This document shows positions 490 to 49,453 of a stretch of 64,000 bases of DNA, in pieces; the stretch's first letter is position 1, and every line of letters begins with the position of its first letter. Location: the IMG/VR virus record IMGVR_UViG_3300023278_002893, positions 1 through 64,000 of that record. One strand, given 5' to 3'. A program made the translations under genes and the position numbers. The notes under the pieces are model-generated. The model did no database searches. It saw nothing but the letters and a program-made list of their open reading frames with translations, and had not been told where the DNA came from.

Positions 490-1125
490 ATGAGTGACAG
501 AATCAAGTATCCTCGCACTCCTCATCTCCCTTGGAGCGAAAGCGTCACTGACGACGATCGAACTCTCAAGAATGTTGATCATCTGTTGGGAAAGAAAATA
601 GTCATCACCGAGAAGATGGATGGGGAAAATACCACCCTCTATCCAGATCATATCCATGCTCGTTCTTTGGATAGTAAAGATCATTGGAGTAGGCATTGGG
701 TGAAGGGTGCTTGGTCTTCTATCCGGCGGGATATTCCAGATGGATGGAGAATCTGCGGCGAGAACATGTACGCTACTCATTCCATTTCCTACGAAGATCT
801 CCCCTCCTATTTTCTCGCATTCTCTATTTGGAATAGTGAGGACGTGTGCCTTAGCTGGAGTGAGACAGAAGACAGCTGTGAAATGCTGGGTATCCCTACC
901 GTACCGGTTCTCTGGAAAGGAGAGTTCCAGGAGAGTATGTTCCCTGAGTTTTGGAACGACTTTGATCCTGAGACGACGGAAGGTTACGTAGTCAGGGTGG
1001 AAGATTCTTTTCGGCGCGAAGATTTTTCACAAAACATAGCCAAGTTTGTAAGAGAAGGTCATGTACAGACCAATGACCACTGGATGCACAGCGGTGCCAG
1101 AAAGAAGAATAGTTTGGGCGTGTAG
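490..1125 (+). CDS. RNA ligase family nucleotidyltransferase (Rnl2-like phage ligase)
   Basis: KYPRTPHLPWS, motif I EKMDGEN, RICGEN, EGYVVR, KFVR..HVQT..HW. Confidence 0.85.
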   Translation: MSDRIKYPRTPHLPWSESVTDDDRTLKNVDHLLGKKIVITEKMDGENTTLYPDHIHARSLDSKDHWSRHWVKGAWSSIRRDIPDGWRICGENMYATHSISYEDLPSYFLAFSIWNSEDVCLSWSETEDSCEMLGIPTVPVLWKGEFQESMFPEFWNDFDPETTEGYVVRVEDSFRREDFSQNIAKFVREGHVQTNDHWMHSGARKKNSLGV

Positions 1126-1192
1126 CTCAACGGTAGAGCAGCGGGCTTTCAATCCCGACCGGTTCGGGGTTCAAATCCCCGTACGCCCTCCA
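1116..1192 (+). tRNA. atypical tRNA with an 8-nt anticodon loop (readable as Glu-TTC or TCA)
   Basis: Acceptor GGGCGTG/TACGCCC, D-stem GCTC/GAGC, T-arm CGGGG-TTCAAAT-CCCCG, U73, encoded CCA; anticodon stem CGGG/CCCG closes the loop CTTTCAAT. Confidence 0.75.
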
Positions 1193-1794: not shown

Positions 1795-2109
1795 ATGAAT
1801 TTCGAACTCGAAACAATGCGGAAGCACATGTGGTGTAGTTGGTGGCACGCAAGGGTTGAAATCATCCCCGATTGGATGCCAAATTTTCCCCGGGATAATA
1901 CCAAACCAAAACTCGTCGTTCGTTACGGTGAATCCTATCTCCGGCACAGCGCGGGCCCCAAACAAGGATTCTTTTGGGATATCTATCCCGATGCCCTGCA
2001 CTCAGAAGAGCTGGCGATTATCGCCGTCTCTGAATGTCCCACCCCATCACTCCGCAACCTCATGCTGGTTGAGGGAGTCAATCCAAAGGATCCAAAACAT
2101 GGACGTTGA
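1795..2109 (+). CDS. hypothetical protein
   Basis: AGGAG RBS, 104 aa. Confidence 0.6.
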   Translation: MNFELETMRKHMWCSWWHARVEIIPDWMPNFPRDNTKPKLVVRYGESYLRHSAGPKQGFFWDIYPDALHSEELAIIAVSECPTPSLRNLMLVEGVNPKDPKHGR

Positions 2110-2410
2110 ACAAGCCAGGAAGGTGATAGACCAATATCGCACCCATCTAATTGATGAGTGCCCTGCGAACGGGCCCACAGACTGGTCCCCTTCGGAACAA
2201 GAACAACGCAATCACCTCTCCTATATGTTGGATAAAATGGGAGAGATGCTAGACGAAGTGGATGATTTGGACGCGCGAGCACAGGACTTCTTCGAGCCCT
2301 GGGAGAAATTCAATCGTTGGTTGGGCTTCATGCAAGGCGTCTTCTGGTCTGCGGGCGATTTTACCCTCGGTGCGATGAAAGATCACAACAGACCTGAAGA
2401 AACGGCTTGA
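2099..2410 (+). CDS. hypothetical phage protein
   Basis: ATG at 2099 (MDVEQARK); KFNRWLGFMQG motif. Confidence 0.65.
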   Translation: MDVEQARKVIDQYRTHLIDECPANGPTDWSPSEQEQRNHLSYMLDKMGEMLDEVDDLDARAQDFFEPWEKFNRWLGFMQGVFWSAGDFTLGAMKDHNRPEETA

Positions 2411-2435
2411 CAAAGGGGAAAGTATCCCGTATCAT
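2407..2435 (+). promoter_or_regulatory. sigma70-type promoter
   Basis: TTGACA-N17-TATCAT. Confidence 0.7.
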
Positions 2436-2520
2436 TGTATTCAGGAGTCCAGAGAAGGACTCATAGGAGTTAGTTATGAGTAAATCAGCAGTTATACATG
2501 TAGTCTCTTCATTCCATGCA

Positions 2521-2529
2521 TGCTATAAT
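2521..2529 (+). promoter_or_regulatory. extended -10 promoter element
   Basis: TG-C-TATAAT. Confidence 0.45.
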
Positions 2530-2655
2530 TGGGCCCCGATTCCAGGTCCCATCGGCTGATTCTCTAACTCACGAAAAACATTGAAGTTTTCAGAGTAGCG
2601 GAGGATCCTGAAGAGGGTCGCTCCGTTTTCGTGTTTCTGGGGAGGGATACAATTT

Positions 2656-3111
2656 TTGCGTAAACTGACTCGCAGTTGGACTAGAAAAGATGGGACTCTA
2701 GTCACCAAGACGTATACATATCGTCGAGGCACAGCTAAGCCTGCGAACAAGGATTACAAAGCTCGCTTCTTCAGGAACATAGACAGGGACGAAACCACAG
2801 GATGTTGGAACTGGAACAAGGGAACCAACGAGAGGGGGTACGGAAGGTTCAAAGTCGGTGGCAAGGACGAATTGGCACACAAATGGGGATATCAGTTCCT
2901 CGTGGGGGAAATAGAAGAGAGCGTACATCTCCACCATTCATGTCTTAACCATCGATGCGTAAATCCTTCCCACTTGGTACCTCTCGAACCCACCCGACAT
3001 GTGGCCCAACATTTAGGACACAATGTAAAACTGGATTTTTGGTCCCGAGAAGAACTAAGGAAATTCTCTCCTCCTGACCTAAAGGACGTGTTGGTCAAGC
3101 GGGAGCTGTAA
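2656..3111 (+). CDS. HNH endonuclease (HNH_3 type)
   Basis: GCWNW...GYGRF...AHKWGY...HHSCLNHRCVNPSHL. Confidence 0.9.
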   Translation: MRKLTRSWTRKDGTLVTKTYTYRRGTAKPANKDYKARFFRNIDRDETTGCWNWNKGTNERGYGRFKVGGKDELAHKWGYQFLVGEIEESVHLHHSCLNHRCVNPSHLVPLEPTRHVAQHLGHNVKLDFWSREELRKFSPPDLKDVLVKREL

Positions 3112-3275
3112 TGCCATACATCACCAAAAACTGCACTCGATGCGGAAACTGGATCAAGAGAAGCCGGAGGAAAAGAAACAGTCTCTGCCTCCGCTGCATT
3201 GAGAAGCTAAATGATGCCTGGTACAAGGTACGGACTGTGAAAGAAAAAGGAAACCGCGATGGCAAAGCAGAATAA
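3111..3275 (+). CDS. small Cys-motif (zinc-finger-like) protein, 54 aa
   Basis: TAATG coupling to the HNH gene; MPYITKNCTRCG...LCLRC. Confidence 0.55.
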   Translation: MPYITKNCTRCGNWIKRSRRKRNSLCLRCIEKLNDAWYKVRTVKEKGNRDGKAE

Positions 3276-3396
3276 GCTCAGAGAAAAGCTGTGGAAAGTG
3301 AATGTCATCCGGGGTAACAACGGGCAGCTCAAGAAGATCACCAGCAGACGTAGACGCGCGTTAGACAAGAAGAAATGCACGGAGGGAACTTCATGA
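3259..3396 (+). CDS. small basic hypothetical protein, 45 aa
   Basis: MAKQNKLREK...; ATGA overlap with the next ORF. Confidence 0.45.
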   Translation: MAKQNKLREKLWKVNVIRGNNGQLKKITSRRRRALDKKKCTEGTS

Positions 3397-3566
3397 GAAC
3401 AACTCACGTAAATGGATTCGAAGTGGCCGGGAATAAATTTCTGGCCATCGCGCTCAATGACGCAGATCCTACAGACGCCCATTGGTTCCTTCCAGGCGAC
3501 CCGGATCAGGACGAGATCGAAGACGCATTCTTGAAGGCAGTGACCTGGACGTCACCAGGAGATTAA
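3393..3566 (+). CDS. hypothetical protein
   Basis: GGAGG RBS and ATGA coupling. Confidence 0.55.
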   Translation: MRTTHVNGFEVAGNKFLAIALNDADPTDAHWFLPGDPDQDEIEDAFLKAVTWTSPGD

Positions 3567-3569
3567 TAT

Positions 3570-3646
3570 ACACCTGTAGCTCAGCCGGTTAGAGCGTTTG
3601 CCTGATACGTAGAAGGTCGCTGGTTCAAATCCAGCCAGGTGTACCA
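3570..3646 (+). tRNA. trnI: tRNA-Ile(GAT)
   Basis: Canonical cloverleaf ACACCTG/CAGGTGT, loop CT-GAT-AC, CCA encoded. Confidence 0.95.
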
Positions 3647-3661
3647 CAGAGGAGAGGAATT

Positions 3662-3928
3662 ATGCCAGGACATCAGATCGTAATAGAAGACACCTCTGAC
3701 CTGGGCAAGATGAAGATGTGGTTGCGGAACGAATACAGAATGAAGGACGGGACAGACTACGCAATAGTTAGGAGATTCGGTGAGACCCATGTGCTAACTA
3801 GGGAAATGTGGGTCGATTATATCAGAGGCGCTGCTGACAGATTTGATATAGACATCACCTCCGTAAGTCTCTACATCGCGAAGATGAAACCCACTACGTA
3901 TCCCACAGAGGAGAATGAGTGTGGCTAA
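3662..3928 (+). CDS. hypothetical protein
   Basis: GAGG RBS, 88 aa. Confidence 0.6.
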   Translation: MPGHQIVIEDTSDLGKMKMWLRNEYRMKDGTDYAIVRRFGETHVLTREMWVDYIRGAADRFDIDITSVSLYIAKMKPTTYPTEENECG

Positions 3929-4121
3929 GAAGACCAGACCTTTCCAAGTGAATGATCACGTTCGCACCCTGGCCAATCCAGAGGACAGTCCCGACGGCTA
4001 TGGTAGGATCAACTTTATCATCGAGAACGGTGAAAAGAGATTCCACGTGGTCAACATGAACATGCCCTATTCAGGCACCGTCAGCGCGTGGTTCAGTGCC
4101 AGTGAGCTGGCCCGAGGCTGA
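3915..4121 (+). CDS. hypothetical protein
   Basis: GGAG RBS, 68 aa. Confidence 0.55.
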   Translation: MSVAKKTRPFQVNDHVRTLANPEDSPDGYGRINFIIENGEKRFHVVNMNMPYSGTVSAWFSASELARG

Positions 4122-4129
4122 CCAGGTGT

Positions 4130-4318
4130 ATGAAAACCAGAAAGCATCACAATAATAAAGGCAATCGACAGATAAGCAGGGGACGTACTGAGTCTCAGGT
4201 CAGAGCGATTGCTAGAAAGATTGGCATCCCCTACAGAGTAGAGAGGACGCCAATTGATAAAGAATTCGACCCAGGAGAGTTTCCCGGGAAGATAGAAAAA
4301 GAAAGAATAAAGGAGTAA
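4130..4318 (+). CDS. hypothetical protein
   Basis: 62-aa basic ORF packed before csp. Confidence 0.5.
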   Translation: MKTRKHHNNKGNRQISRGRTESQVRAIARKIGIPYRVERTPIDKEFDPGEFPGKIEKERIKE

Positions 4319-6224: not shown

Positions 6225-6312
6225 GGAGGTGAGGTAACTGTCGGTTAGTTGCAGCAGACTGTAAATCTGCCGTCTTAGGGCTTCGCAGGTTCGACTCCTG
6301 CCACCTCCACCA
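6225..6312 (+). tRNA. trnY: tRNA-Tyr(GTA)
   Basis: GGAGGTG/CACCTCC, loop CT-GTA-AA, long variable arm, CCA. Confidence 0.92.
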
Positions 6313-9699: not shown

Positions 9700-10004
9700 T
9701 GAGGATCTTGGAACTAAAGTCATCTGCGGTACTACTGATGGGAATCTTCCTGTACGTCAGCGCATTCAATTACTACTTGGGGAGTGAGGTCGCGGACATC
9801 AAGCGCGACCGAGAGATTGCCCACGAAACTGATCAACGAGAACGTGAAGCGTACATGCAACAGCAGTTGGGATACGCCCGGGAGATGGCTGAGATCCGAG
9901 CGCGCCAATATTCGACCTTGGGGTTTGCATTTCAAGCGGAAGAAACCAGCAGTCGTATGGACATGGTAGAGACCATCGTCCCCCAAGAGGTCGAGAGCCC
10001 CTAG
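9699..10004 (+). CDS. hypothetical protein with N-terminal TM segment and coiled coil
   Basis: AGGAG RBS, TGATG coupling. Confidence 0.6.
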   Translation: MRILELKSSAVLLMGIFLYVSAFNYYLGSEVADIKRDREIAHETDQREREAYMQQQLGYAREMAEIRARQYSTLGFAFQAEETSSRMDMVETIVPQEVESP

Positions 10005-10033
10005 AAAAAAAGTTAGGGTGTAGTATTTATTGA

Positions 10034-10117
10034 TGCCCGGTAGCATAATTGGCAATGCACCGCCCTGTTAAGGCGAGGGGAAACCCCATGTAGGTTCAAG
10101 TCCTACCCGGGCAGCCA
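10034..10117 (+). tRNA. trnN: tRNA-Asn(GTT) with a long variable arm
   Basis: TGCCCGG/CCGGGCA, loop CT-GTT-AA, variable region GGGG-AAA-CCCC-AT, G73, CCA. Confidence 0.9.
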
Positions 10118-10138
10118 GATAATTATAGGAGGTACGAC

Positions 10139-10534
10139 ATGACAGACGTACAGTCGGCTCTACTGTTATTCTTTCTCTTCAACCTCAAGCATCTTGTCGT
10201 AGATTTCTTCGTCCAGAATAGATTCCCTTACATGTGGATGAACAAGCACAACATATTTCATCCCGGAGGTTGGCTACACGCAGGAGGACATGGATTGGCA
10301 TCCTTCCTTTTCTTCAGCCACTTTATGAGTTGGCAAGTAGCGATGCTAGGCTGCACTGCTGAGACCATCATTCATTTCTTCATTGACTGCATCAAGATGA
10401 ACTTCGGGAAGTGGAGGGGGTGGAAATGTAACACCAGTCCCTACTTCTGGGATCTGCTGGGAGTAGATCAGTTTCTTCATCAGGCAACATATATCTGGAT
10501 GATCTATGTCTGGAGTAACGGGATAGGAGTGTAG
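10139..10534 (+). CDS. DUF3307 family membrane protein
   Basis: KHLVVDFFVQ...LHAGGHG...HFFIDCIK...FWDLLGVDQFLH. Confidence 0.8.
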   Translation: MTDVQSALLLFFLFNLKHLVVDFFVQNRFPYMWMNKHNIFHPGGWLHAGGHGLASFLFFSHFMSWQVAMLGCTAETIIHFFIDCIKMNFGKWRGWKCNTSPYFWDLLGVDQFLHQATYIWMIYVWSNGIGV

Positions 10535-43044: not shown

Positions 43045-44076
43045 ATGATTACGCTCGACACTTTTATCGGGAACACCGAACTAATTCAGCTCCTGAAAAT
43101 AGAAGTAATGGCAGCAAGAATGCGCAACAAAGAAATGCCCCACGTTTTACTAAAAGGCCCGGCTGGGTGCGGAAAGACTACCCTCGGAGAGGTACTCGCA
43201 CGCGAATTTGGAGGGGAGCTGACAACGCTCACCCCCAATACCGCAAAGAACGCGGACGACTTAAGAAAGTTCTTCCTGGAGATGCCGGATCAGGGGTACG
43301 ATGAGGAAGGCAAAATAGTTGGTAAAATAGATCCTCAAATCGTATTCATCGACGAGGTTCACCAACTGTCTCTGCTAGCCCAGGAGCTGTTGGGAATCGC
43401 AATGCATGACTGGAGACTTCCTGTCAGGGTAGGGGGCAAGGATGAGTTCGAATGGGTACCTAGATTTACATTAGTGGGTGCAACTACCGTACCTGGAAAA
43501 CTATCTAAACCCTTCCGAGACAGATTCAAGGTACAAGCCCTGTTCGAAACCTATTCCCACAGAGAATCTCTAGAGATAGTAGATGTTCACGCCAGGAATG
43601 AAGGTCTCCAGCTGGGTGAGGGTGTCTCAGATTCGATAGCAAAGAGATCCAGAGGAGTGGGACGTCTCTTGGTAAGGTATTTAGACAGACTTGCATCAGC
43701 GGCAGTGGTGGCATCTCAGGTCAGACCGGAGGGAAGTAATGTTATTACTTTACCTCTTGCAAATAAAATGTTTGCAGATTTCCTAAAAGTGGACGATCGG
43801 GGGCTGACGAAAACGGACATAAAGATCTTAAAGCAGCTCCACCTTCTGGAAGATCCAGTAGGATTAGATACCCTAGCTGCGATAACCAACGAAGAAAAAT
43901 CTACCATAGAACAAGAAATTGAACCATATTTAGTGCAGGAGGGGCTACTAGCCCGAACTAAACGTGGTCGAGTTATAACAGACGAAGGCAGACGATATTT
44001 ACACACCGCCGGCTACATCAAACTGGCGCCTACCTCGGCGAGAGGGGGCCGCATTATGGGAGCATCGGAGAAATGA
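43045..44076 (+). CDS. ruvB: Holliday junction branch-migration AAA+ ATPase RuvB
   Basis: HVLLKGPAGCGKTTL, FIDEVH, FTLVGATT, PFRDRF, EPYLVQEG...RTKRGR. Confidence 0.92.
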   Translation: MITLDTFIGNTELIQLLKIEVMAARMRNKEMPHVLLKGPAGCGKTTLGEVLAREFGGELTTLTPNTAKNADDLRKFFLEMPDQGYDEEGKIVGKIDPQIVFIDEVHQLSLLAQELLGIAMHDWRLPVRVGGKDEFEWVPRFTLVGATTVPGKLSKPFRDRFKVQALFETYSHRESLEIVDVHARNEGLQLGEGVSDSIAKRSRGVGRLLVRYLDRLASAAVVASQVRPEGSNVITLPLANKMFADFLKVDDRGLTKTDIKILKQLHLLEDPVGLDTLAAITNEEKSTIEQEIEPYLVQEGLLARTKRGRVITDEGRRYLHTAGYIKLAPTSARGGRIMGASEK

Positions 44077-44909
44077 GTCGAGGAAGCGTAGAGTATCTGA
44101 AGAAAAAACTTAAGGGTCCCATCCTAGAAGAAATCATCGACCCCGCGGACTACTCGCGCGACGACATCATGAAGTCATACTTCCGAGAAATCTTATTCCT
44201 AGCGTCTCGTTTTACTCGCCCCTACGTAGATTACGAAGACCTGGTAGATGAGGGAATCATAGGATTGCTTGACGCGATCAAAAGATTCGACATCAAAAAG
44301 GCCAATAACAATCCCAAGGCATTCCACAACCTCGCTATCGTCCGTATAAAGAGCCATATGTTCGAATTCTTCCTAGCGAACAATACTCAATATACGATTC
44401 CGAACTACATGGCACGGGCAATGGAATTGCTCGGACAAATTCGAGCCACTATCAGCAACTCCAACTACCGAGGGAACAAACAGGAAGCTCTTCGACACCT
44501 CGTATGTGAAGACTTCGAGAACACCGCGGCTCCCGAGGCTGTCAAGAAACTAGGGGTAGTGAAAGGCAAGATGCAACGACTTGCTATCAGCTCCGCTAAG
44601 AGCTATGAAGATATGGTACTTACAGTATTGAAGGTCGAAAGGGACATCGAAAGCTACGAAACGCCCGGCAGTGAGGTAGAACCCACACCAGAAGAAATCA
44701 CTGCGGACAGGGAATATATAGAGAAATTCCTGGACAACCTAAATCCCGACGCAAAGGCTGTCATCACCATGGTCTTAGAGGGCAAGTCCCTGAAGGAAGC
44801 TGGTAGAGAGCGTGGATTCTCTCGTGAACGGGCGCGGCAAATCAAAGAGGCTACGATGAAATACTTCAGGGCCACGCCTATGTACAAAGAATCCGTAGAA
44901 AAAGAATAA
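44073..44909 (+). CDS. sigma-70 family RNA polymerase sigma factor
   Basis: Region 2: EDLVDEGIIGLLDAIKRFD; region 4: SLKEAGRERGFSRERARQI. Confidence 0.88.
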   Translation: MSRGSVEYLKKKLKGPILEEIIDPADYSRDDIMKSYFREILFLASRFTRPYVDYEDLVDEGIIGLLDAIKRFDIKKANNNPKAFHNLAIVRIKSHMFEFFLANNTQYTIPNYMARAMELLGQIRATISNSNYRGNKQEALRHLVCEDFENTAAPEAVKKLGVVKGKMQRLAISSAKSYEDMVLTVLKVERDIESYETPGSEVEPTPEEITADREYIEKFLDNLNPDAKAVITMVLEGKSLKEAGRERGFSRERARQIKEATMKYFRATPMYKESVEKE

Positions 44910-44944: not shown

Positions 44945-46426
44945 ATGAAGCGACTAAGAGCACTGCGGGAGCTTCGAAAAGAGTTAGGGGCAGAAGTTTT
45001 CTTGGTTGGAGGAACGGTCAGAGACCTGATCCGACGAAGAGAACCCAACGACCTGGACGTTATGGTACGAGGAATCGCCCCCGCTGAATTCGAAACTTTC
45101 CTACGTAAAAGGGGTGCCCTAGAACTTGTAGGTGCATCCTTCGGAGTATATCTTTTCAGACCCACCGAAGAGGGAGGGCAGATCGAGATCGCATTCCCCA
45201 GAACTGAAATTAGCACGGGCGACAAGCACGGTGAGAGTGGTTGGAATGCCGTTCCGGACACCGATCTATCCGTGGAAGAAGATTCAAAAAGACGAGATTT
45301 CACTATCAATGCGATGTATCTCAGCATTGATGATGTGACAGAGAGCGGAGAGTTTAAGCGCGAGCGCGTGATTGATTTTCATAACGGGTTGGATCACATA
45401 AAGAAACGCCTTATCGTAGCAGTGGGAGATCCCGAAGAGAGGATTGAAGAAGATCCACTACGTATGATGAGGGCAATGGTTCTAATAGCCCGAACCGGTT
45501 ATCGTTTGGAGGGCAACACCTTCGGCGCGATCAAAAGAAACGTTGGAAAGGTACAATCAGTGTCCGCTGAACGTATCCGAGATGAGTTCATAAAGATCAT
45601 GGAGGCGGAGAAACCTTCTCGCGGATTCAAAGCCATGTCCAGAACTGAACTTCTAGGAATAATCTTTCCAGAACTACACGCATGTACAGGCTGCGGTCAA
45701 AACCCCAAGTACCACTCGTACCCAGTCTTCGAACACAGCATCACAGCGGCAGACGCAGCTTGCTCCCTGACTGACAGGTTAGATGTTAGGTTCGCAGCAC
45801 TTTGCCACGATTTGGGAAAGGTTCCTACGCGGGAAGTGCGCCCGGGAGGTGATGGCCCAAACGACGTCTCGTTCCATAACCACGAGATGGCATCCTGTAA
45901 GCTGACTTACGCTTTCATGTGCCGATTGAAGTTCCCAAAGAAGTTCACCGACGCGGTGATTGCGTTAGTACGAATGCATCAATATAAATACGATCGAGAG
46001 TGGACCGATAAGGCTGTGCGAAGGTTCATTCGGAACATCGGACTCACCCGGGCAGACCTGGACGATCTCGAAAACCACCCCCAGTTCCTACTCAGGATGG
46101 CGGATCGAATGGGAAACCAACTGAAAGTACACCTCCCCGTAACCATCAAACAGAGAGACTTTCAGGGGCGACTTCGAGAAGTGTATGAAAGCTCAGGAGC
46201 CCACAGCCTTCGGGACTTGAAGATCAATGGTCGAGATCTCATAGAACGATTCGTGATCGCTACGGGTCCTGTAGTGGGTAAGGTAATTGCCCACCTGTTT
46301 GACGCGGTGGAGGAAGCTCCGGAACTAAACAACAGGGACGACCTTTTCCGTCTTGCCGGATTGTTCCTAGAGGAGGAAGAAAATGGAAGTGATCAAACTA
46401 ACCGAGTCAGCTCAAGTACAAGCTAA
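44945..46426 (+). CDS. cca: CCA tRNA nucleotidyltransferase with HD domain
   Basis: LVGGTVRD...DLD, RRDFTINA, EDPLRMMRA, ERIRDEF, HS...LCHDLGK. Confidence 0.93.
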   Translation: MKRLRALRELRKELGAEVFLVGGTVRDLIRRREPNDLDVMVRGIAPAEFETFLRKRGALELVGASFGVYLFRPTEEGGQIEIAFPRTEISTGDKHGESGWNAVPDTDLSVEEDSKRRDFTINAMYLSIDDVTESGEFKRERVIDFHNGLDHIKKRLIVAVGDPEERIEEDPLRMMRAMVLIARTGYRLEGNTFGAIKRNVGKVQSVSAERIRDEFIKIMEAEKPSRGFKAMSRTELLGIIFPELHACTGCGQNPKYHSYPVFEHSITAADAACSLTDRLDVRFAALCHDLGKVPTREVRPGGDGPNDVSFHNHEMASCKLTYAFMCRLKFPKKFTDAVIALVRMHQYKYDREWTDKAVRRFIRNIGLTRADLDDLENHPQFLLRMADRMGNQLKVHLPVTIKQRDFQGRLREVYESSGAHSLRDLKINGRDLIERFVIATGPVVGKVIAHLFDAVEEAPELNNRDDLFRLAGLFLEEEENGSDQTNRVSSSTS

Positions 46427-46718
46427 GGAACTGCTGGCAAGAGAATCAGAAGCACCTGCGGGTCTGAGAGTGGAGGCAGTAGCGGGGAGCTGTAATAACT
46501 TGCAGTATAGAATAGGATGGGACAATCCCAAGGAAGGGGATGAGGTTTTTACTTATCCAAATGGAATGGTTGTCATGGTAGACCAGAAATCCTCTGCGAT
46601 GCTGAAGGGCAGCGTCCTAGAATTTCACAACACAAGCGAAGGATCTGGCTTCGAGGTCATCAATCCTCGTTCCACAGGATGTTCCGGTTGTGAGTGCGGT
46701 AATGGTTCTAATGTCTAA
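46383..46718 (+). CDS. iscA: HesB/IscA family Fe-S cluster assembly carrier
   Basis: LRV...GSCN..QY, VDQKS...LKGS.LEF, NP.....CECG. Confidence 0.85.
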   Translation: MEVIKLTESAQVQAKELLARESEAPAGLRVEAVAGSCNNLQYRIGWDNPKEGDEVFTYPNGMVVMVDQKSSAMLKGSVLEFHNTSEGSGFEVINPRSTGCSGCECGNGSNV

Positions 46719-46777
46719 ACGGTGTTAAGTAGCACGTAAGTGGCGGGGCACTGACCTAAACCCGCGCCGTTTAGTAG

Positions 46778-46812
46778 AAAAGCCCACACTAATAGCACAG
46801 TGTGGGCTTTTT
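46778..46812 (+). terminator. intrinsic terminator after iscA
   Basis: 13-bp stem AAAAGCCCACACT/AGTGTGGGCTTTT, 8-nt loop, U-tract. Confidence 0.85.
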
Positions 46813-48600
46813 GCGTTCGGCTCCCGTCCTGACGGAGGCGAACGTCGGGGTCAAATTCGATCCTGGTTGTCACATAGGAGATCCTCTCTCTGTGAGTAAA
46901 ATAGGGCTGAGTTTAGATACCAAAAGATGGGAAAGGCAGCAGGCAAGTAGCCACATAACCTGCCCTACTGGTGCTTTTGGAATTCATCTATTCTCTTGCT
47001 CCGACTTTTGATGTCAAGATTCCTCGACAACCTTACTCCCCAGGCCCAATATCCAAAGTAGGGGCGCCAACGCCTCGAAAGCGGTGCGGGCCTCCCCGAC
47101 CTGTCTCGCAGTAGTTACCCTGAAGGGAAGCTGGATGGGAAGAACGCTGCGAACTCAGAACCCGGGCTCAATCGTATTTGACCTTAAGTCGGAAGACATC
47201 GTTGGATCACGGTTCGGAGATCTTTTCTGAACTATCTAACGGCTCCTGTCTTTCTATAGTACTGTGGGGTAGTTTATACCTGGATTAAAACGGTACGTGT
47301 GTTGACCTTGGATCTTGGGAAAAAGTGAAAGTTTTCCCCCGGGGTTCAGATAAGAGTTCATGTGGCCAGATCACATTTCCTCCCCGAATCTGAATTCATT
47401 ATCCAATACTTCATCACTTCTTACAGACATACAAGAACGAACCCGGTGTTCCTCGGCCAGAAACATTTCGCCAAGGTGACCTACGGCCGTTCTCTATGCA
47501 TTAAGCCCTGATGTATGGGGCTGAAGCGCGCGTGTCTGTAAGAAGCGTATTTAGCAACGTTCGAATCGTTGCCCCCACTCCAGTATCTTTTGCGGAGGAG
47601 TGTTACCTCTTCCGTTTTAGCACCTACACTAACTCCAGTAGGTGCCCGTTAATCTAAATAACAATTCCAGACAGCGTGCTACCCTATATTAGAGTGGGTA
47701 CGTTCAATCGGATCTGTTTATAAGATTACGGTGAGCCACTGAGAACTACTAATTCCCAGTAGGAGTGTAATTCTATTGATGTACTAGTTAAAGTAAAAAA
47801 CCTGGTTGACGGGGGAATCGGTCTGAAGGAAAGTCTTGGAAACACTTGCGGAACTATTGAACTGAAGCCGGATTAGTGAGTATAGCAACCACCAACCCAA
47901 AGCGAATGCTTGACTTGCGTTCAAGAGGGTGTGGTGTGGGAGCTGAAAGCGGAGGTGGATGTGACCTAGCAACAAAAGTACGGAAGAGACTGGAATGATG
48001 ACGGATTTCTGGTTTTCTACTTCTGCGAAGAATGGCTAATGTGCGACCTTGTGGGGATCAATGTAACCCAGTCTTGAACTGGGAAGCTTCCTGCCGGGAC
48101 TTCAGAACCATACTTCTTTCCTACCACGCAAATTTGGTTCGCCAACATCACTGCCTGGCGGGGAAGAGGGTACTCTCGGGTCGGGGGAGTAGTGTCCTCC
48201 GACAATATTTTTTTTACGAGATAGAACTGGTTTAGTCCGTATACTACCCTCGGATGTGCCATAGTTAGGGAAGGTAATCTCCCATCATAGCGAAGAAGCT
48301 TAGACTGATGGGACTGAACTAACTGTGAAGCTGCCTTGTTTATGGAAAAGACGGACCTCCGTGTTAAGTGAAAACCAATTAACTCTGTCAACTTAAGAGA
48401 CAGAAAAGAGCGGTGGAAACTTAAGGCGGGTGGAGTATCTTAGCGTTGGGGTTTTCGATAAAGGCTTTGTGGCCCATACCCTTGGAAGCAATTAGTCAAA
48501 GTAAGTGCGGAAGGTAAGAGATTAGATCTCTCGGCAATCAACAAGGACCTACCCCAGAGTAGGGGATACTTGGAAATGTTCCTTAGAAACGGAGTTCAAC
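46813..48600 (+). ncRNA. about 1.8-kb structured non-coding region (one or several RNAs, family unknown)
   Basis: No credible ORF in an otherwise gene-dense genome; many helices whose G.U pairs are valid only on the + strand. Confidence 0.55.
47264..47582 (+). ncRNA. tRNA-like cloverleaf with a 248-nt insert in place of the anticodon loop
   Basis: Acceptor GTGGGG/CCCCAC + T + CCA; D-stem GTTT/AAAC; stem GTACG/CGTAT; T-arm GCAACG-TTCGAAT-CGTTGC. Confidence 0.65.
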
Positions 48601-48601
48601 A

Positions 48602-49453
48602 ATGATATATGTATTATATAAGGGCTCAGGCTGTCATTCCGGACGTTCACTTCGGAAACAACTTGCAGAACTACACGACGGTCAAGTAGCGGGGGGTTAC
48701 CCCGGACGACTGAAGAAACTGGTGGCGAGGTCGGGAGAACCCGAGTTCGTAGTCAATTTAGGAACCACAGACGAGTTTACTTTAAGTTCTACTTTTTTGA
48801 ACAATAGGGATATGGTCAAAGCTGCGTCTAATAAGAAAGCCGCACGGAAGATATTTGAAGAACAGGGCGTAGCTGCCCCCAAACTTTACCTCAAGGCCGC
48901 CGACATTCCAGAATCAGGATTCCCGGTGGTAGGAAGGACAAGCTACCACTCCAAGGGTAATGGATTTTGGTATTGCAAGAACATGCGGGACGTAAACCAG
49001 GCTGTCAGGAACGGGGCAACCCACTTCATGCAATTCATTCCAAGGACTCGGGAGTATCGTGTTCATACATTCGTCAAAGCGAAGCACATGGGGAAAGAGG
49101 GTCGCGAGGTTGCTGACTTCGTGTCGGTAAAGATCTCCGAAAAGGTATGGACAGGAGAGGGTAAGCCAAACCCCAATGAGCCGCAGAAAAATCACAACTT
49201 TGGTTGGACTTTTCTCGGCCCCCAAAACCGGCGGGAAGAAGAACTAAACGTGGTAAGAAGAGCAGCCAAGGAGTCTATCGCAGCATTGAAAATGGATTTC
49301 GGTGCCGTGGATGTGATGTACCACGTTAGGAGTAAGAGTCCCCACGTATTAGAAGTGAACTCCACTCCCAGCCTGGCAGACGATAACTCAGACACATGTA
49401 GGCGTTATGCCGACCGGATCCTCAGGACTTTGGGGAAACTAAAGGAAAACTAG
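48602..49453 (+). CDS. ATP-grasp ligase (phiEco32/YheC-D-like)
   Basis: AASNKK..R..F, PVVGR..YH..G, EYRVH, DFGAVD, VLEVNSTPSL. Confidence 0.9.
   Translation: MIYVLYKGSGCHSGRSLRKQLAELHDGQVAGGYPGRLKKLVARSGEPEFVVNLGTTDEFTLSSTFLNNRDMVKAASNKKAARKIFEEQGVAAPKLYLKAADIPESGFPVVGRTSYHSKGNGFWYCKNMRDVNQAVRNGATHFMQFIPRTREYRVHTFVKAKHMGKEGREVADFVSVKISEKVWTGEGKPNPNEPQKNHNFGWTFLGPQNRREEELNVVRRAAKESIAALKMDFGAVDVMYHVRSKSPHVLEVNSTPSLADDNSDTCRRYADRILRTLGKLKEN

What the first reader, a model, noticed from the sequence alone, without database searches (positions are those of the whole stretch)
46813..48600. About 1.8 kb of ORF-free, densely base-paired sequence: candidate giant phage ncRNA locus
Seen: elsewhere in the window intergenic gaps are mostly tens of bases, but here about 1.8 kb between the iscA terminator and the ATP-grasp gene lacks a credible ORF. 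Helices include 47592-47600/47607-47615 (two G.U), GCACCTAC/GTAGGTGC (47620-47645), CCCAGT/ACTGGG (48067-48083), TCCCATCA/TGATGGGA (48280-48313), TTGG-TTCG-CCAA and several GAAA-capped stems. The wobble pairs are valid only for a + strand transcript. Known: phages encode large ornate RNAs (GOLLD, ROOL), often near tRNAs. Inference: one very large or several tandem structured RNAs of unknown family; a replication-origin or packaging region is the alternative.
Basis: partly seen in the sequence, partly recalled or inferred. Interest (0 to 1): 0.7.

Follow-up and report, generated by a model that had tools for sequence, protein, structure and literature searches.

The report
Giant structured RNA locus, jumbo phage
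A 1.9 kb gene-free stretch of a 298 kb marine phage genome encodes very large folded RNAs, including a tRNA look-alike with a CCA tail, that match no catalogued RNA family, are conserved in every related phage examined, and are found in sediment RNA samples where the neighbouring genes are not.

Summary
Window 46719-48601 is the longest ORF-free stretch of the 298 kb phage genome. No alternative genetic code opens a frame. Substitutions show no codon periodicity.

All 24 related uncultured marine jumbo-phage contigs examined have the same layout: CCA-adding enzyme, IscA-like gene, a 1.5-2.2 kb gap, then a RimK-like ATP-grasp gene.

The gap evolves as + strand RNA:
- Consensus folding energy is -318 (+ strand), -251 (- strand) and about -18 (shuffled columns).
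- In the 3' domain, 62 of 80 predicted pairs show compensatory changes.

It has three parts:
- M1, about 450 nt.
- A tRNA-like module (47264-47582) with acceptor, D and T arms and an encoded CCA, but 250 nt in place of the anticodon loop.
- M3, a closed domain of about 745 nt (47801-48545).

Rfam 15 and ARAGORN match nothing. The tRNA-like module fails the tests for tmRNA and for an intron-bearing tRNA.

For one relative, four sediment metatranscriptomes hold contigs only inside the gap, none on the flanking genes.

Function is unknown. The closest analogues are GOLLD and ROOL, plus tmRNA-like tRNA mimicry. This is probably a new RNA class.

The parts
44945..46426 (+). Flank: CCA-adding tRNA nucleotidyltransferase gene. 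It is syntenic with the RNA locus in every relative.
   Evidence: Pfam PolyA_pol, PolyA_pol_RNAbd, HD and tRNA_NucTran2_2. Same gene order in L002/L149, L150, L231-L245 and L309-L318.
46383..46718 (+). Flank: IscA-like Fe-S assembly gene. Its stop codon marks the start of the non-coding locus.
   Evidence: PF01521. Gene calls in relatives.
46719..46811 (+). 5' hairpin region. It holds a conserved hairpin (46718-24/46765-71, 46744-47/46761-64) and a GC-rich hairpin followed by a U run (46778-91/46798-811). The second looks like the IscA terminator.
   Evidence: Consensus helices are 91-96% paired, with 4, 2 and 9 pairs changed on both sides. Weak match to the terminator part of the Thr leader model. 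In relative L245, RNA contigs start 40 nt after the IscA stop and run through this hairpin.
46812..47263 (+). M1: 5' structured domain. Main helices are 46888-97/47004-13, 46902-07/46998-47003, 47049-53/47083-92, 47061-65/47071-75 and 47118-21/47136-39.
   Evidence: fold_alignment A4: 20 predicted pairs, 18 with both-side changes. Whole-gap consensus. Highest RNA contig density in the L245 homologue.
47264..47582 (+). tRNA-like module (TLD RNA). Acceptor 47264-69/47573-78. U8 at 47270, A14 at 47276, G18 G19 at 47282-83. D stem 47272-75/47288-91. Anticodon-like stem 47293-97/47546-50. About 250 nt of insert (47298-47545) sits where the anticodon loop should be. T arm 47554-59/47567-72 with loop TTCGAAT. 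Discriminator at 47579. Encoded CCA at 47580-82.
   Evidence: Read directly from the sequence. Alignment of 23 homologues. All four stems recovered in the whole-gap consensus. Acceptor covaries: GUGGGG/CCCCAC versus GUGGAG/CUCCAC in L309 and L312. T arm and anticodon-like stem covary. A strict cloverleaf-with-insert scan finds it, with 0 hits in shuffles. A distant relative, L003:9873-10249, has the same frame with a different acceptor.
47592..47645 (+). Two hairpins just after the CCA end. 47592-600/47607-15 is followed by a T run and looks like a terminator. The second is 47620-27/47638-45.
   Evidence: Terminator-like call at 47594-47610. Both hairpins are kept with compensatory changes in the five closest relatives.
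47646..47800 (+). Variable linker, poorly conserved in both sequence and length.
   Evidence: Alignment occupancy 0.2-0.6 and identity 0.13-0.5.
47801..48545 (+). M3: large closed multi-helix domain. The outer helix is 47804-17/48527-39. Nested long-range helices are 48009-16/48518-23, 48020-27/48506-13, 48034-39/48492-97, 48044-54/48479-89, 48057-61/48455-59, 48084-90/48448-54, 48094-104/48431-43 and 48106-10/48228-33. Local arms are 48067-72/78-83, 48113-30/48152-69, 48249-57/48330-37, 48261-68/48319-26, 48280-87/48306-13 and 48463-66/71-74.
   Evidence: fold_alignment A3, 24 sequences: 80 pairs, 62 with both-side changes. Helix table. The count of structure pairs on 48224-48342: covariation 0.473 against 0.209 +/- 0.016 in shuffles, 0 of 500 reaching it. 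Single copy in the genome (nhmmer E = 8e-98).
48546..48601 (+). Short hairpin (CCCC-AGAGUA-GGGG) followed by the Shine-Dalgarno region of the ATP-grasp gene.
   Evidence: Sequence. The motif CAGAGUAG is conserved in the close relatives.
48602..49453 (+). Flank: RimK-like ATP-grasp ligase gene. It served as the anchor for finding relatives.
   Evidence: PHROG 2599. More than 130 homologues at 54-72% identity on contigs up to 320 kb.

Best explanation
SHOWN. Window 46719-48601 is a single-copy, non-coding, + strand locus for very large structured RNA. It is conserved at one syntenic position (CCA-adding enzyme, IscA-like gene, RNA locus, RimK-like ATP-grasp) in a clade of uncultured marine and sediment jumbo phages. 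It has three folded units:
- M1, about 450 nt.
- A tRNA-like module. It keeps the acceptor stem, D arm, T arm, the elbow nucleotides (U8, A14, G18 G19, TTCRA) and a 3' N-CCA, but carries 200-350 nt where the anticodon loop should be.
- M3, a 560-840 nt closed multi-helix domain.
In a relative, the RNA accumulates in natural samples where the flanking mRNAs are not detected.

INFERRED MECHANISM. The locus is transcribed rightward as one or two long precursors and yields stable, trans-acting RNA rather than a message. The tRNA-like module offers the two features that tRNA enzymes read, the acceptor/T-arm stack with its elbow and the CCA end. It is therefore a likely substrate for RNase P and for the phage's own CCA-adding enzyme, encoded two genes upstream. 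It may act as a built-in processing point and 3'-end handle, and/or as an anticodon-less tRNA mimic aimed at the translation or tRNA-surveillance machinery. M3, and perhaps M1, is a self-folding scaffold of the GOLLD/ROOL type: a large phage RNA linked to tRNA-type elements that acts as RNA-only or RNP architecture during infection.
For: Non-coding:
- No open frame under any stop reassignment.
- Mismatch fractions by codon position are 0.30/0.32/0.31 in the gap against 0.24/0.15/0.55 in the flanking genes, and most indels are not multiples of 3.
- It is the longest ORF-free stretch in the genome.

Conservation and synteny: 24 loci.

Structure:
- Whole-gap RNAalifold gives -317.8 on the + strand, -250.6 on the - strand, and -12 to -23 for column shuffles.
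- G.U cells outnumber A.C cells 619 to 172.
- M3 has 62 of 80 pairs compensatory. M1 has 18 of 20.
- A sub-block gives covariation 0.473 against 0.209 +/- 0.016, with 0 of 500 shuffles reaching it.

tRNA-like module:
- Its stems are recovered in the consensus.
- The acceptor, T arm and anticodon-like stem covary.
- Roughly half of the relatives encode CCA after the discriminator; the others read TCA, TAA or another triplet there.
- The same frame, with a different acceptor, occurs in a relative whose CCA enzyme is only 36% identical.

Transcription: 34 contigs from four marine-sediment metatranscriptomes lie only within L245:2111-4091 (the gap is 2072-4234). None lies on 3.8 kb of flanking genes.

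No known family.

GOLLD/ROOL parallels are taken from PMC12286853.
Against: - No transcription data exist for the window's own phage. No run was listed for it, and the four RNA runs hold nothing at least 80% like it.
- The RNA evidence is Logan contigs, which carry no strand or end information, and the runs were chosen because they hold words from the gap.
- Contigs span the M1/tRNA-like junction, so RNase P cleavage there is unproven and at best incomplete.
- No promoter was found. No sigma-70-type site lies on the + strand.
- The number of mature RNAs is unknown.
- No function, partner or oligomeric state has been tested.
- The GOLLD/ROOL likeness is one of architecture and context only.
Confidence: 0.65

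Rival explanations
1. The middle module is a highly divergent tmRNA (trans-translation RNA). M1 and M3 are unrelated flanking RNAs.
For: The topology matches tmRNA: 5' acceptor strand, a long internal insert, then T arm, 3' acceptor strand and CCA. Huge phages are reported to carry tmRNAs and SmpB (PMC7162821).
Against: - Pair 3:70 is G-C, not the G.U that AlaRS needs.
- A 4 bp D stem is present. That tmRNA lacks one is from my own knowledge.
- I saw no conserved tag reading frame in the insert alignments; the aligned stop triplet has an in-frame TGA two codons upstream in L312.
- ARAGORN tmRNA mode finds nothing, even at relaxed score.
- The Rfam tmRNA model at E <= 10 hits only ordinary tRNAs in this genome.
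- The phage has no SmpB gene.
Confidence: 0.07
2. The middle module is a real tRNA gene interrupted by a large (group I-type) intron in the anticodon loop. Splicing would give a normal tRNA.
For: The cloverleaf frame is present. ARAGORN in intron mode calls a tRNA with a 158-309 nt 'intron' in some homologues.
Against: - Only 1 of 17 homologues passes ARAGORN's default score.
- The relaxed calls give inconsistent anticodons (Thr, Val, Gly, Arg, His, Tyr, Phe) and inconsistent intron positions.
- The residues after the 5' strand of the stem are N-G-U rather than Y-U33, and no 7 nt loop can be assembled consistently.
- No group I or group II intron model matches at E <= 10.
- The stem continues by further pairs into the insert.
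Confidence: 0.05
3. The region, or at least M3, is a giant cis-acting leader that controls the downstream ATP-grasp operon, rather than a free-standing RNA.
For: M3 ends only about 55 nt before the ATP-grasp start codon, on the same strand, with no intrinsic terminator between them. The adjacency is conserved in all relatives.
Against: RNA contigs cover the gap but not the downstream gene in all four runs. A length of 745 nt far exceeds known leaders (my own knowledge). M1 and the tRNA-like module lie upstream of a terminator-like hairpin.
Confidence: 0.12
4. The stretch is a DNA-level element: a replication origin, a packaging site or decayed coding sequence.
For: It is a long non-coding stretch in an otherwise gene-dense genome.
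Against: - No direct repeats or iterons.
- GC content is 0.46-0.52, like its surroundings, and cumulative GC skew does not turn here.
- Compensatory changes include strand-specific G.U pairs.
- The region is present in RNA libraries without its flanks.
- Conserved blocks persist across relatives whose flanking ATP-grasp protein is only 54-72% identical, which argues against neutral decay.
Confidence: 0.03

Closest known systems
[quoted passage not shown]
   Same: Both are very large (over 800 nt), phage-borne and heavily base-paired, with no known protein partner. [quoted passage not shown] Here the layout is M1, a tRNA-like module, a variable linker, then the best-conserved 3' domain M3, in a phage with 29 tRNAs.
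   Different: No match to any Rfam model, GOLLD included, at E <= 10. The locus is about twice as long. The embedded element is not a tRNA but an anticodon-less mimic with a 200-350 nt insert. It lies about 25 kb from the tRNA island rather than inside it. The oligomeric cage is untested.
ROOL RNA (Rfam RF03087)
   Same: A large ornate RNA of phages and prophages, often near tRNA islands, and abundant in cells (PMC12286853). Here too, RNA contigs are found where the neighbouring mRNAs are not.
   Different: The ROOL model finds nothing in the whole phage genome at E <= 10. That search also rang in none of its 14 control genomes, so the tool's sensitivity for this family is unproven. The sequence motifs and helix layout are unrelated.
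tmRNA
   Same: A tRNA-like domain built from the two ends of a several-hundred-nt RNA: acceptor stem, T arm with a TTCRA loop, and a 3' CCA.
   Different: Pair 3:70 is G-C instead of G.U. A D stem is present. There is no conserved tag frame, no hit with tmRNA models or ARAGORN, and no phage SmpB.
tRNA-like processing elements (the MALAT1/mascRNA type, and spacer tRNAs in rRNA operons)
   Same: A tRNA-shaped element embedded between large structured RNAs could mark the RNase P and CCA-adding processing points. This is an analogy from my own knowledge.
   Different: Those systems use compact elements of about 60-75 nt. Here the element carries a large, itself conserved, insert. Cleavage has not been shown, and RNA contigs span the 5' junction.

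Membership tests
tmRNA | tRNA-like domain formed by the 5' and 3' ends: acceptor stem, T arm and CCA | tested here: met
   Acceptor 47264-69/47573-78, T arm 47554-59/47567-72, CCA 47580-82. Conserved and covarying.
tmRNA | G3.U70 wobble pair, the alanine identity element | tested here: not met
   G3-C70 in the window. In the A5 alignment the 3' acceptor strand reads C at this position in nearly all rows.
tmRNA | Internal tag-peptide reading frame with a conserved resume codon and stop | tested here: not met
   I saw no conserved frame in the insert alignments. The aligned stop triplet has an in-frame TGA two codons upstream in L312.
tmRNA | Recognised by tmRNA covariance models or by ARAGORN | tested here: not met
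   Rfam at E <= 10: none. The RF00023 search of the genome hits only ordinary tRNAs. ARAGORN -m finds none in 17 homologues, even at relaxed score.
tmRNA | SmpB partner protein | tested here: inconclusive
   No SmpB (PF01668) in the phage genome. The host is unknown and could supply it.
tRNA with an anticodon-loop intron | Cloverleaf with acceptor, D, anticodon and T stems and the elbow nucleotides | tested here: met
   All four stems appear in the consensus. U8, A14, G18 G19 and TTCRA are invariant or nearly so.
tRNA with an anticodon-loop intron | After removal of the insert, a 7 nt anticodon loop with U33 and one consistent anticodon | tested here: not met
   ARAGORN intron mode makes 1 default call and 8 relaxed calls in 17 homologues, with seven different anticodons. 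The residues after the stem are N-G-U.
tRNA with an anticodon-loop intron | Insert recognisable as a group I or group II intron | tested here: not met
   No intron family at E <= 10.
GOLLD | Match to the family's covariance model | tested here: not met
   cmscan of all 4227 Rfam 15 families on 46600-48800 at E <= 10 returns only five chance-level hits, none of them GOLLD. Nothing reaches gathering score in 12 relatives.
GOLLD | Large phage RNA with a conserved 3' region, a variable 5' region or linker, and tRNA association | tested here: met
   Conservation profile and domain map. tRNA-like module in the middle. 29 tRNAs in the genome. Family description from PMC12286853.
GOLLD / ROOL | Homo-oligomeric RNA-only nanocage | not testable with these tools
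   Needs cryo-EM or native gels of in vitro transcripts.
ROOL | Match to RF03087 | tested here: not met
   No match in the whole genome at E <= 10. The tool's 14 control genomes also gave none, so its sensitivity here is unproven. The all-family scan agrees.
Replication origin / packaging site | Iterons or direct repeats, an AT-rich unwinding tract, and a GC-skew inflection | tested here: not met
   0 direct-repeat families. GC content 0.46-0.52 and monotonic cumulative skew across the locus.

The most novel reading that the evidence does not exclude
This is a new class of giant composite phage RNA. An anticodon-less, CCA-tailed tRNA mimic is joined to two large self-folding domains. The whole assembles into an RNA-only or RNP machine, possibly a cage as in GOLLD and ROOL, that presents or hides the tRNA-like end. 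In that way it would manipulate host translation, tRNA repair or anti-phage tRNA surveillance during jumbo-phage infection.
Probability: 0.3. Interest if true: 0.9.

Novelty: categorically new. Interest (0 to 1): 0.85.

Why it matters
Large, intricately folded non-coding RNAs are rare. Ribosomal RNA, RNase P RNA, self-splicing introns, OLE, GOLLD and ROOL are the main examples, and each discovery has exposed new RNA chemistry or architecture.

This locus would add a family that:
- is longer than GOLLD;
- has an unusually rich covariation record;
- is backed by expression evidence from natural samples;
- contains a tRNA mimic with the anticodon arm replaced by a 200-350 nt conserved insert.

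It lies next to a phage CCA-adding enzyme in a phage with 29 tRNAs. That makes the open question of what tRNA-linked giant phage RNAs do directly testable. The RNA can be transcribed in vitro, and checked for RNase P cleavage, CCA addition, aminoacylation and oligomer formation.

It also shows that gene callers misannotate the region. They place spurious minus-strand ORFs on it, and one record extends the ATP-grasp gene by about 100 codons into M3.

Tried and rejected
- Alternative genetic codes. No single stop reassignment opens a frame.
- Sequence similarity. blastn against 50,697 phage records finds nothing. blastn against the syntenic relative L002 finds no significant similarity inside the gap. 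Homology there rests on short collinear anchors, and closer relatives do align.
- Known RNA families. Rfam at gathering score and at E <= 10 on the window and relatives finds nothing. ARAGORN finds nothing.
- tmRNA and intron-bearing tRNA readings: rejected (see the rival explanations).
- RNase P RNA. I did not see the conserved core motifs in the alignments, and there is no Rfam hit.
- My early idea of a local UUCU-GNRA-AGAA hairpin at 48021-48033 was wrong. 48020-27 pairs long-range with 48506-13, with 8 of 8 pairs compensatory.
- A second 'tRNA-like module with insert' at genome 293070-293537 is a false positive that spans tRNA-Asp and tRNA-Glu.
- The 14-mer and 17-base motif scans of viral and genome collections gave mostly chance hits. 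An M3 profile then found only family members.
- Sequencing runs for the window itself: none was listed. The four RNA runs hold nothing at least 80% like the window.
- RF01998 was queried by mistake. It is a group II intron fragment model, not GOLLD, and gave only E > 3 noise.
- The ATP-grasp profile has no PDB sequence match, and no cultured phage has it above 30% identity.
- The ORF-poor region at genome 246.8-251.1 kb has no Rfam hit and looks like a cluster of small ORFs. It was not pursued.
Full report
CONTEXT. The window is the first 64 kb of a 297,725 bp IMG/VR virus record rated complete. The genome carries 29 tRNA genes, at 274-297.7 kb and 1-22 kb. Around the finding, all on the + strand, lie:
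- RuvB-like ATPase (43045-44076).
- Sigma-70-like factor (44073-44909).
- CCA-adding enzyme (44945-46426).
- IscA-like protein (46383-46718).
- The gap.
- A 283 aa RimK-like ATP-grasp (48602-49453; no Pfam hit, PHROG 2599).
- A 294 aa protein.
- MgtC.

No frame in 46719-48601 stays open for more than 140 codons, and no single stop reassignment opens one. It is the longest stretch without an ORF of 60 aa or more, or 80 aa or more, in the entire genome. Folding is better than shuffles: z = -5.5 for 46813-47700 and z = -2.2 for 47701-48600. Rfam 15 finds only tRNAs elsewhere in the window. Nothing in the gap scores better than chance at E <= 10. ARAGORN finds nothing.

RELATIVES. The ATP-grasp protein has more than 130 homologues at 54-72% identity in metagenomes, on contigs up to 320 kb. 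I collected 24 loci with upstream DNA from IMG/VR, JGI, ENA, NCBI and Logan. Every one shows the order CCA-adding enzyme, IscA-like gene, a 1.5-2.2 kb ORF-poor gap, then the ATP-grasp. Gene callers leave the gap empty or place inconsistent minus-strand ORFs on it. L310 and L311 are identical DNA with different calls. In L313 the ATP-grasp call runs about 100 codons into the RNA. No cultured phage has the ATP-grasp above 30% identity. An M3 profile finds one copy in the genome and none outside the family among 4 Mb of other loci.

IT EVOLVES AS RNA, NOT AS PROTEIN OR AS A DNA SITE.
- Mismatch fractions by position modulo 3 are flat in the gap (0.30/0.32/0.31). In the flanking genes they are 0.24/0.15/0.55. 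Most indels in the gap are not multiples of three.
- There are no direct repeats. There is no compositional or skew anomaly.
- A consensus fold of 20 full-length gaps gives -317.8 kcal/mol on the + strand, -250.6 on the - strand, and -12 to -23 for column-shuffled alignments. G.U cells outnumber A.C cells 619 to 172, so the RNA is + strand.

ARCHITECTURE (window coordinates).
1. 46719-46811: a conserved hairpin, then the GC-rich hairpin with a U run that looks like the IscA terminator.
2. M1, 46812-47263: 20 predicted pairs in the 22-sequence alignment, 18 of them with changes on both sides.
3. The tRNA-like module, 47264-47582 (detailed below).
4. 47592-47645: two hairpins, the first terminator-like.
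5. 47646-47800: a variable linker.
6. M3, 47801-48545: closed by a 12 bp helix (47804-17/48527-39). It is built from nested long-range helices. One example is 48020-27/48506-13, where all 8 pairs show compensatory changes and up to six pair types.
   - In the 24-sequence alignment, 62 of 80 predicted pairs show changes on both sides with the pair kept.
   - For the sub-block 48224-48342 with a structure I specified, the covariation score is 0.473. Shuffles give 0.209 +/- 0.016, with 0 of 500 reaching it, and slid registers give at most 0.194.

THE tRNA-LIKE MODULE.
- Layout. 5' GUGGGG (acceptor), U8, A, GUUU (D stem), a D loop with A14 and the invariant GG, AAAC, G, GUACG (stem in the anticodon-arm position). 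Then about 250 nt. Then CGUAU, a short variable loop, T arm GCAACG-UUCGAAU-CGUUGC, CCCCAC (acceptor 3' strand), U, CCA.
- Conservation. The 5' block is the most conserved part of the whole locus.
- Covariation across 23 homologues.
  - Acceptor: GUGGGG/CCCCAC versus GUGGAG/CUCCAC in L309 and L312.
  - T stem: GCAACG/CGUUGC, GCGGG/CCCGC, GCAGG/CCUGC, GUGGG/CCCAC, AUGAGG/CCUCAU.
  - Anticodon-position stem: GUACG/CGUAU, UGCUG/CAGCA, CGUCG/CGACG, CACUG/CAGUG.
- 3' end. After the discriminator, roughly half of the relatives encode CCA. The others read TCA, TAA or another triplet.
- Distant relative. In L003, whose CCA-adding enzyme is only 36% identical, a 378 nt element at L003:9873-10249 folds on its own into the same frame with an unrelated acceptor, GGUUCUA/UAGAACC.
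- Scan control. A strict scan for a cloverleaf with a large insert finds the module and gives no hits in shuffled sequence.

IT IS NEITHER A tmRNA NOR A SPLIT tRNA.
- Pair 3:70 is G-C rather than G.U.
- A D stem is present.
- I saw no conserved tag frame in the insert alignments.
- tmRNA models and ARAGORN's tmRNA mode fail.
- The phage has no SmpB.
- ARAGORN's intron mode recognises the frame in 8 of 17 homologues only at relaxed score. The anticodons and intron positions it reports are inconsistent. No U33-type loop can be assembled.
- No intron family matches.

TRANSCRIPTION.
- No run was listed for the window itself.
- For the homologous gap of L245, 20 DNA runs (seawater and marine sediment) and four marine-sediment metatranscriptomes were listed.
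- When those four RNA runs were laid on L245:1-5971, all 34 contigs fell inside 2111-4091. The gap there is 2072-4234. No contig touched the 2.07 kb of CCA-enzyme and IscA genes or the 1.74 kb of ATP-grasp and downstream genes.
- By domain, bases laid per kb are: M1 4045, 5' hairpins 2115, tRNA-like module 1293, M3 962, linker 656, flanking genes 0.
- DNA carry-over would have covered the flanks as well.
- Caveats. These are Logan contigs without strand or end information. The runs were picked through the gap sequence. Contigs span the M1/tRNA-like junction, so cleavage there is not shown. The same runs hold nothing at least 80% like the window.

INTERPRETATION.
- Secure: a conserved, expressed, multi-domain structured RNA locus of an uncatalogued family.
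- Inferred from what tRNA enzymes are known to read, namely the acceptor/T-arm stack, the elbow and the CCA end: the tRNA-like module is a substrate or decoy for RNase P, for the neighbouring CCA-adding enzyme, and perhaps for other tRNA-binding factors. It may also punctuate the precursor.
- M3 resembles GOLLD and ROOL in size, phage origin, abundance and association with tRNA-type elements. GOLLD has a conserved 3' region, a variable 5' region, and sometimes tRNAs in its linker (PMC12286853). Neither the ROOL model nor any other Rfam model matches, so this is likeness of kind, not membership.
- I found no paper describing this locus. Short pieces of it could be among the 8,495 unnamed IMG/VR motifs of PMC10690425, which I could not check.

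VERDICT. The locus is probably a new class of giant phage RNA. Its function is open.

Noticed in passing
window 1116-1192: ARAGORN reports a tRNA of undetermined type with a four-letter anticodon string (ttca). Rfam scores the same place as a tRNA at 53.7 bits. It could be a UGA-reading suppressor or a tRNA with an 8 nt anticodon loop.
   Followed up: no
window 6225-6312: ARAGORN calls a tRNA-Tyr here. It is absent from the Rfam gathering list for the window, yet it is the best partial hit of the tmRNA model (35 bits).
   Followed up: no
window 1-22268 and genome 274773-297191: The phage has 29 tRNA genes in one island that runs across the ends of the linear record. The RNA locus lies about 25 kb beyond that island.
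   Followed up: partly
L003:9411-11450: In a distant relative (CCA enzyme 36% identical) the stretch after the CCA-enzyme gene is also ORF-poor. It holds a 378 nt tRNA-like module with insert (9873-10249), a second T-arm-like element near 10349 followed by a CCA-ending tail, and a long-arm tRNA with anticodon UAA. There is no M3-like domain.
   Followed up: partly
genome 246785-251099 (outside the window; L459:1286-5600): This is the longest stretch of the genome without an ORF of 130 aa or more (4.3 kb). It looks like a run of small ORFs with two gaps of about 450 nt. No Rfam match at E <= 1.
   Followed up: partly
L313:3201-3512: The public record (a MAG labelled Altiarchaeales) annotates the ATP-grasp as 385 aa, so the call extends about 100 codons into the M3 RNA. 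The contig is clearly a member of this phage family and has probably been mis-binned.
   Followed up: partly
window 47357-47379 and homologous positions in relatives: Most relatives carry a conserved ACAC-AAGGAGGU...CCUCC block in the insert of the tRNA-like module. It is a Shine-Dalgarno-like sequence paired with its complement. The window has a different hairpin at that place. No conserved ORF follows it.
   Followed up: partly
window 44073-44909: A phage-encoded sigma-70-like factor (regions 2 and 4) sits three genes upstream of the RNA locus. No sigma-70 consensus promoter was found on the + strand of the locus, so the promoter type is unknown.
   Followed up: no
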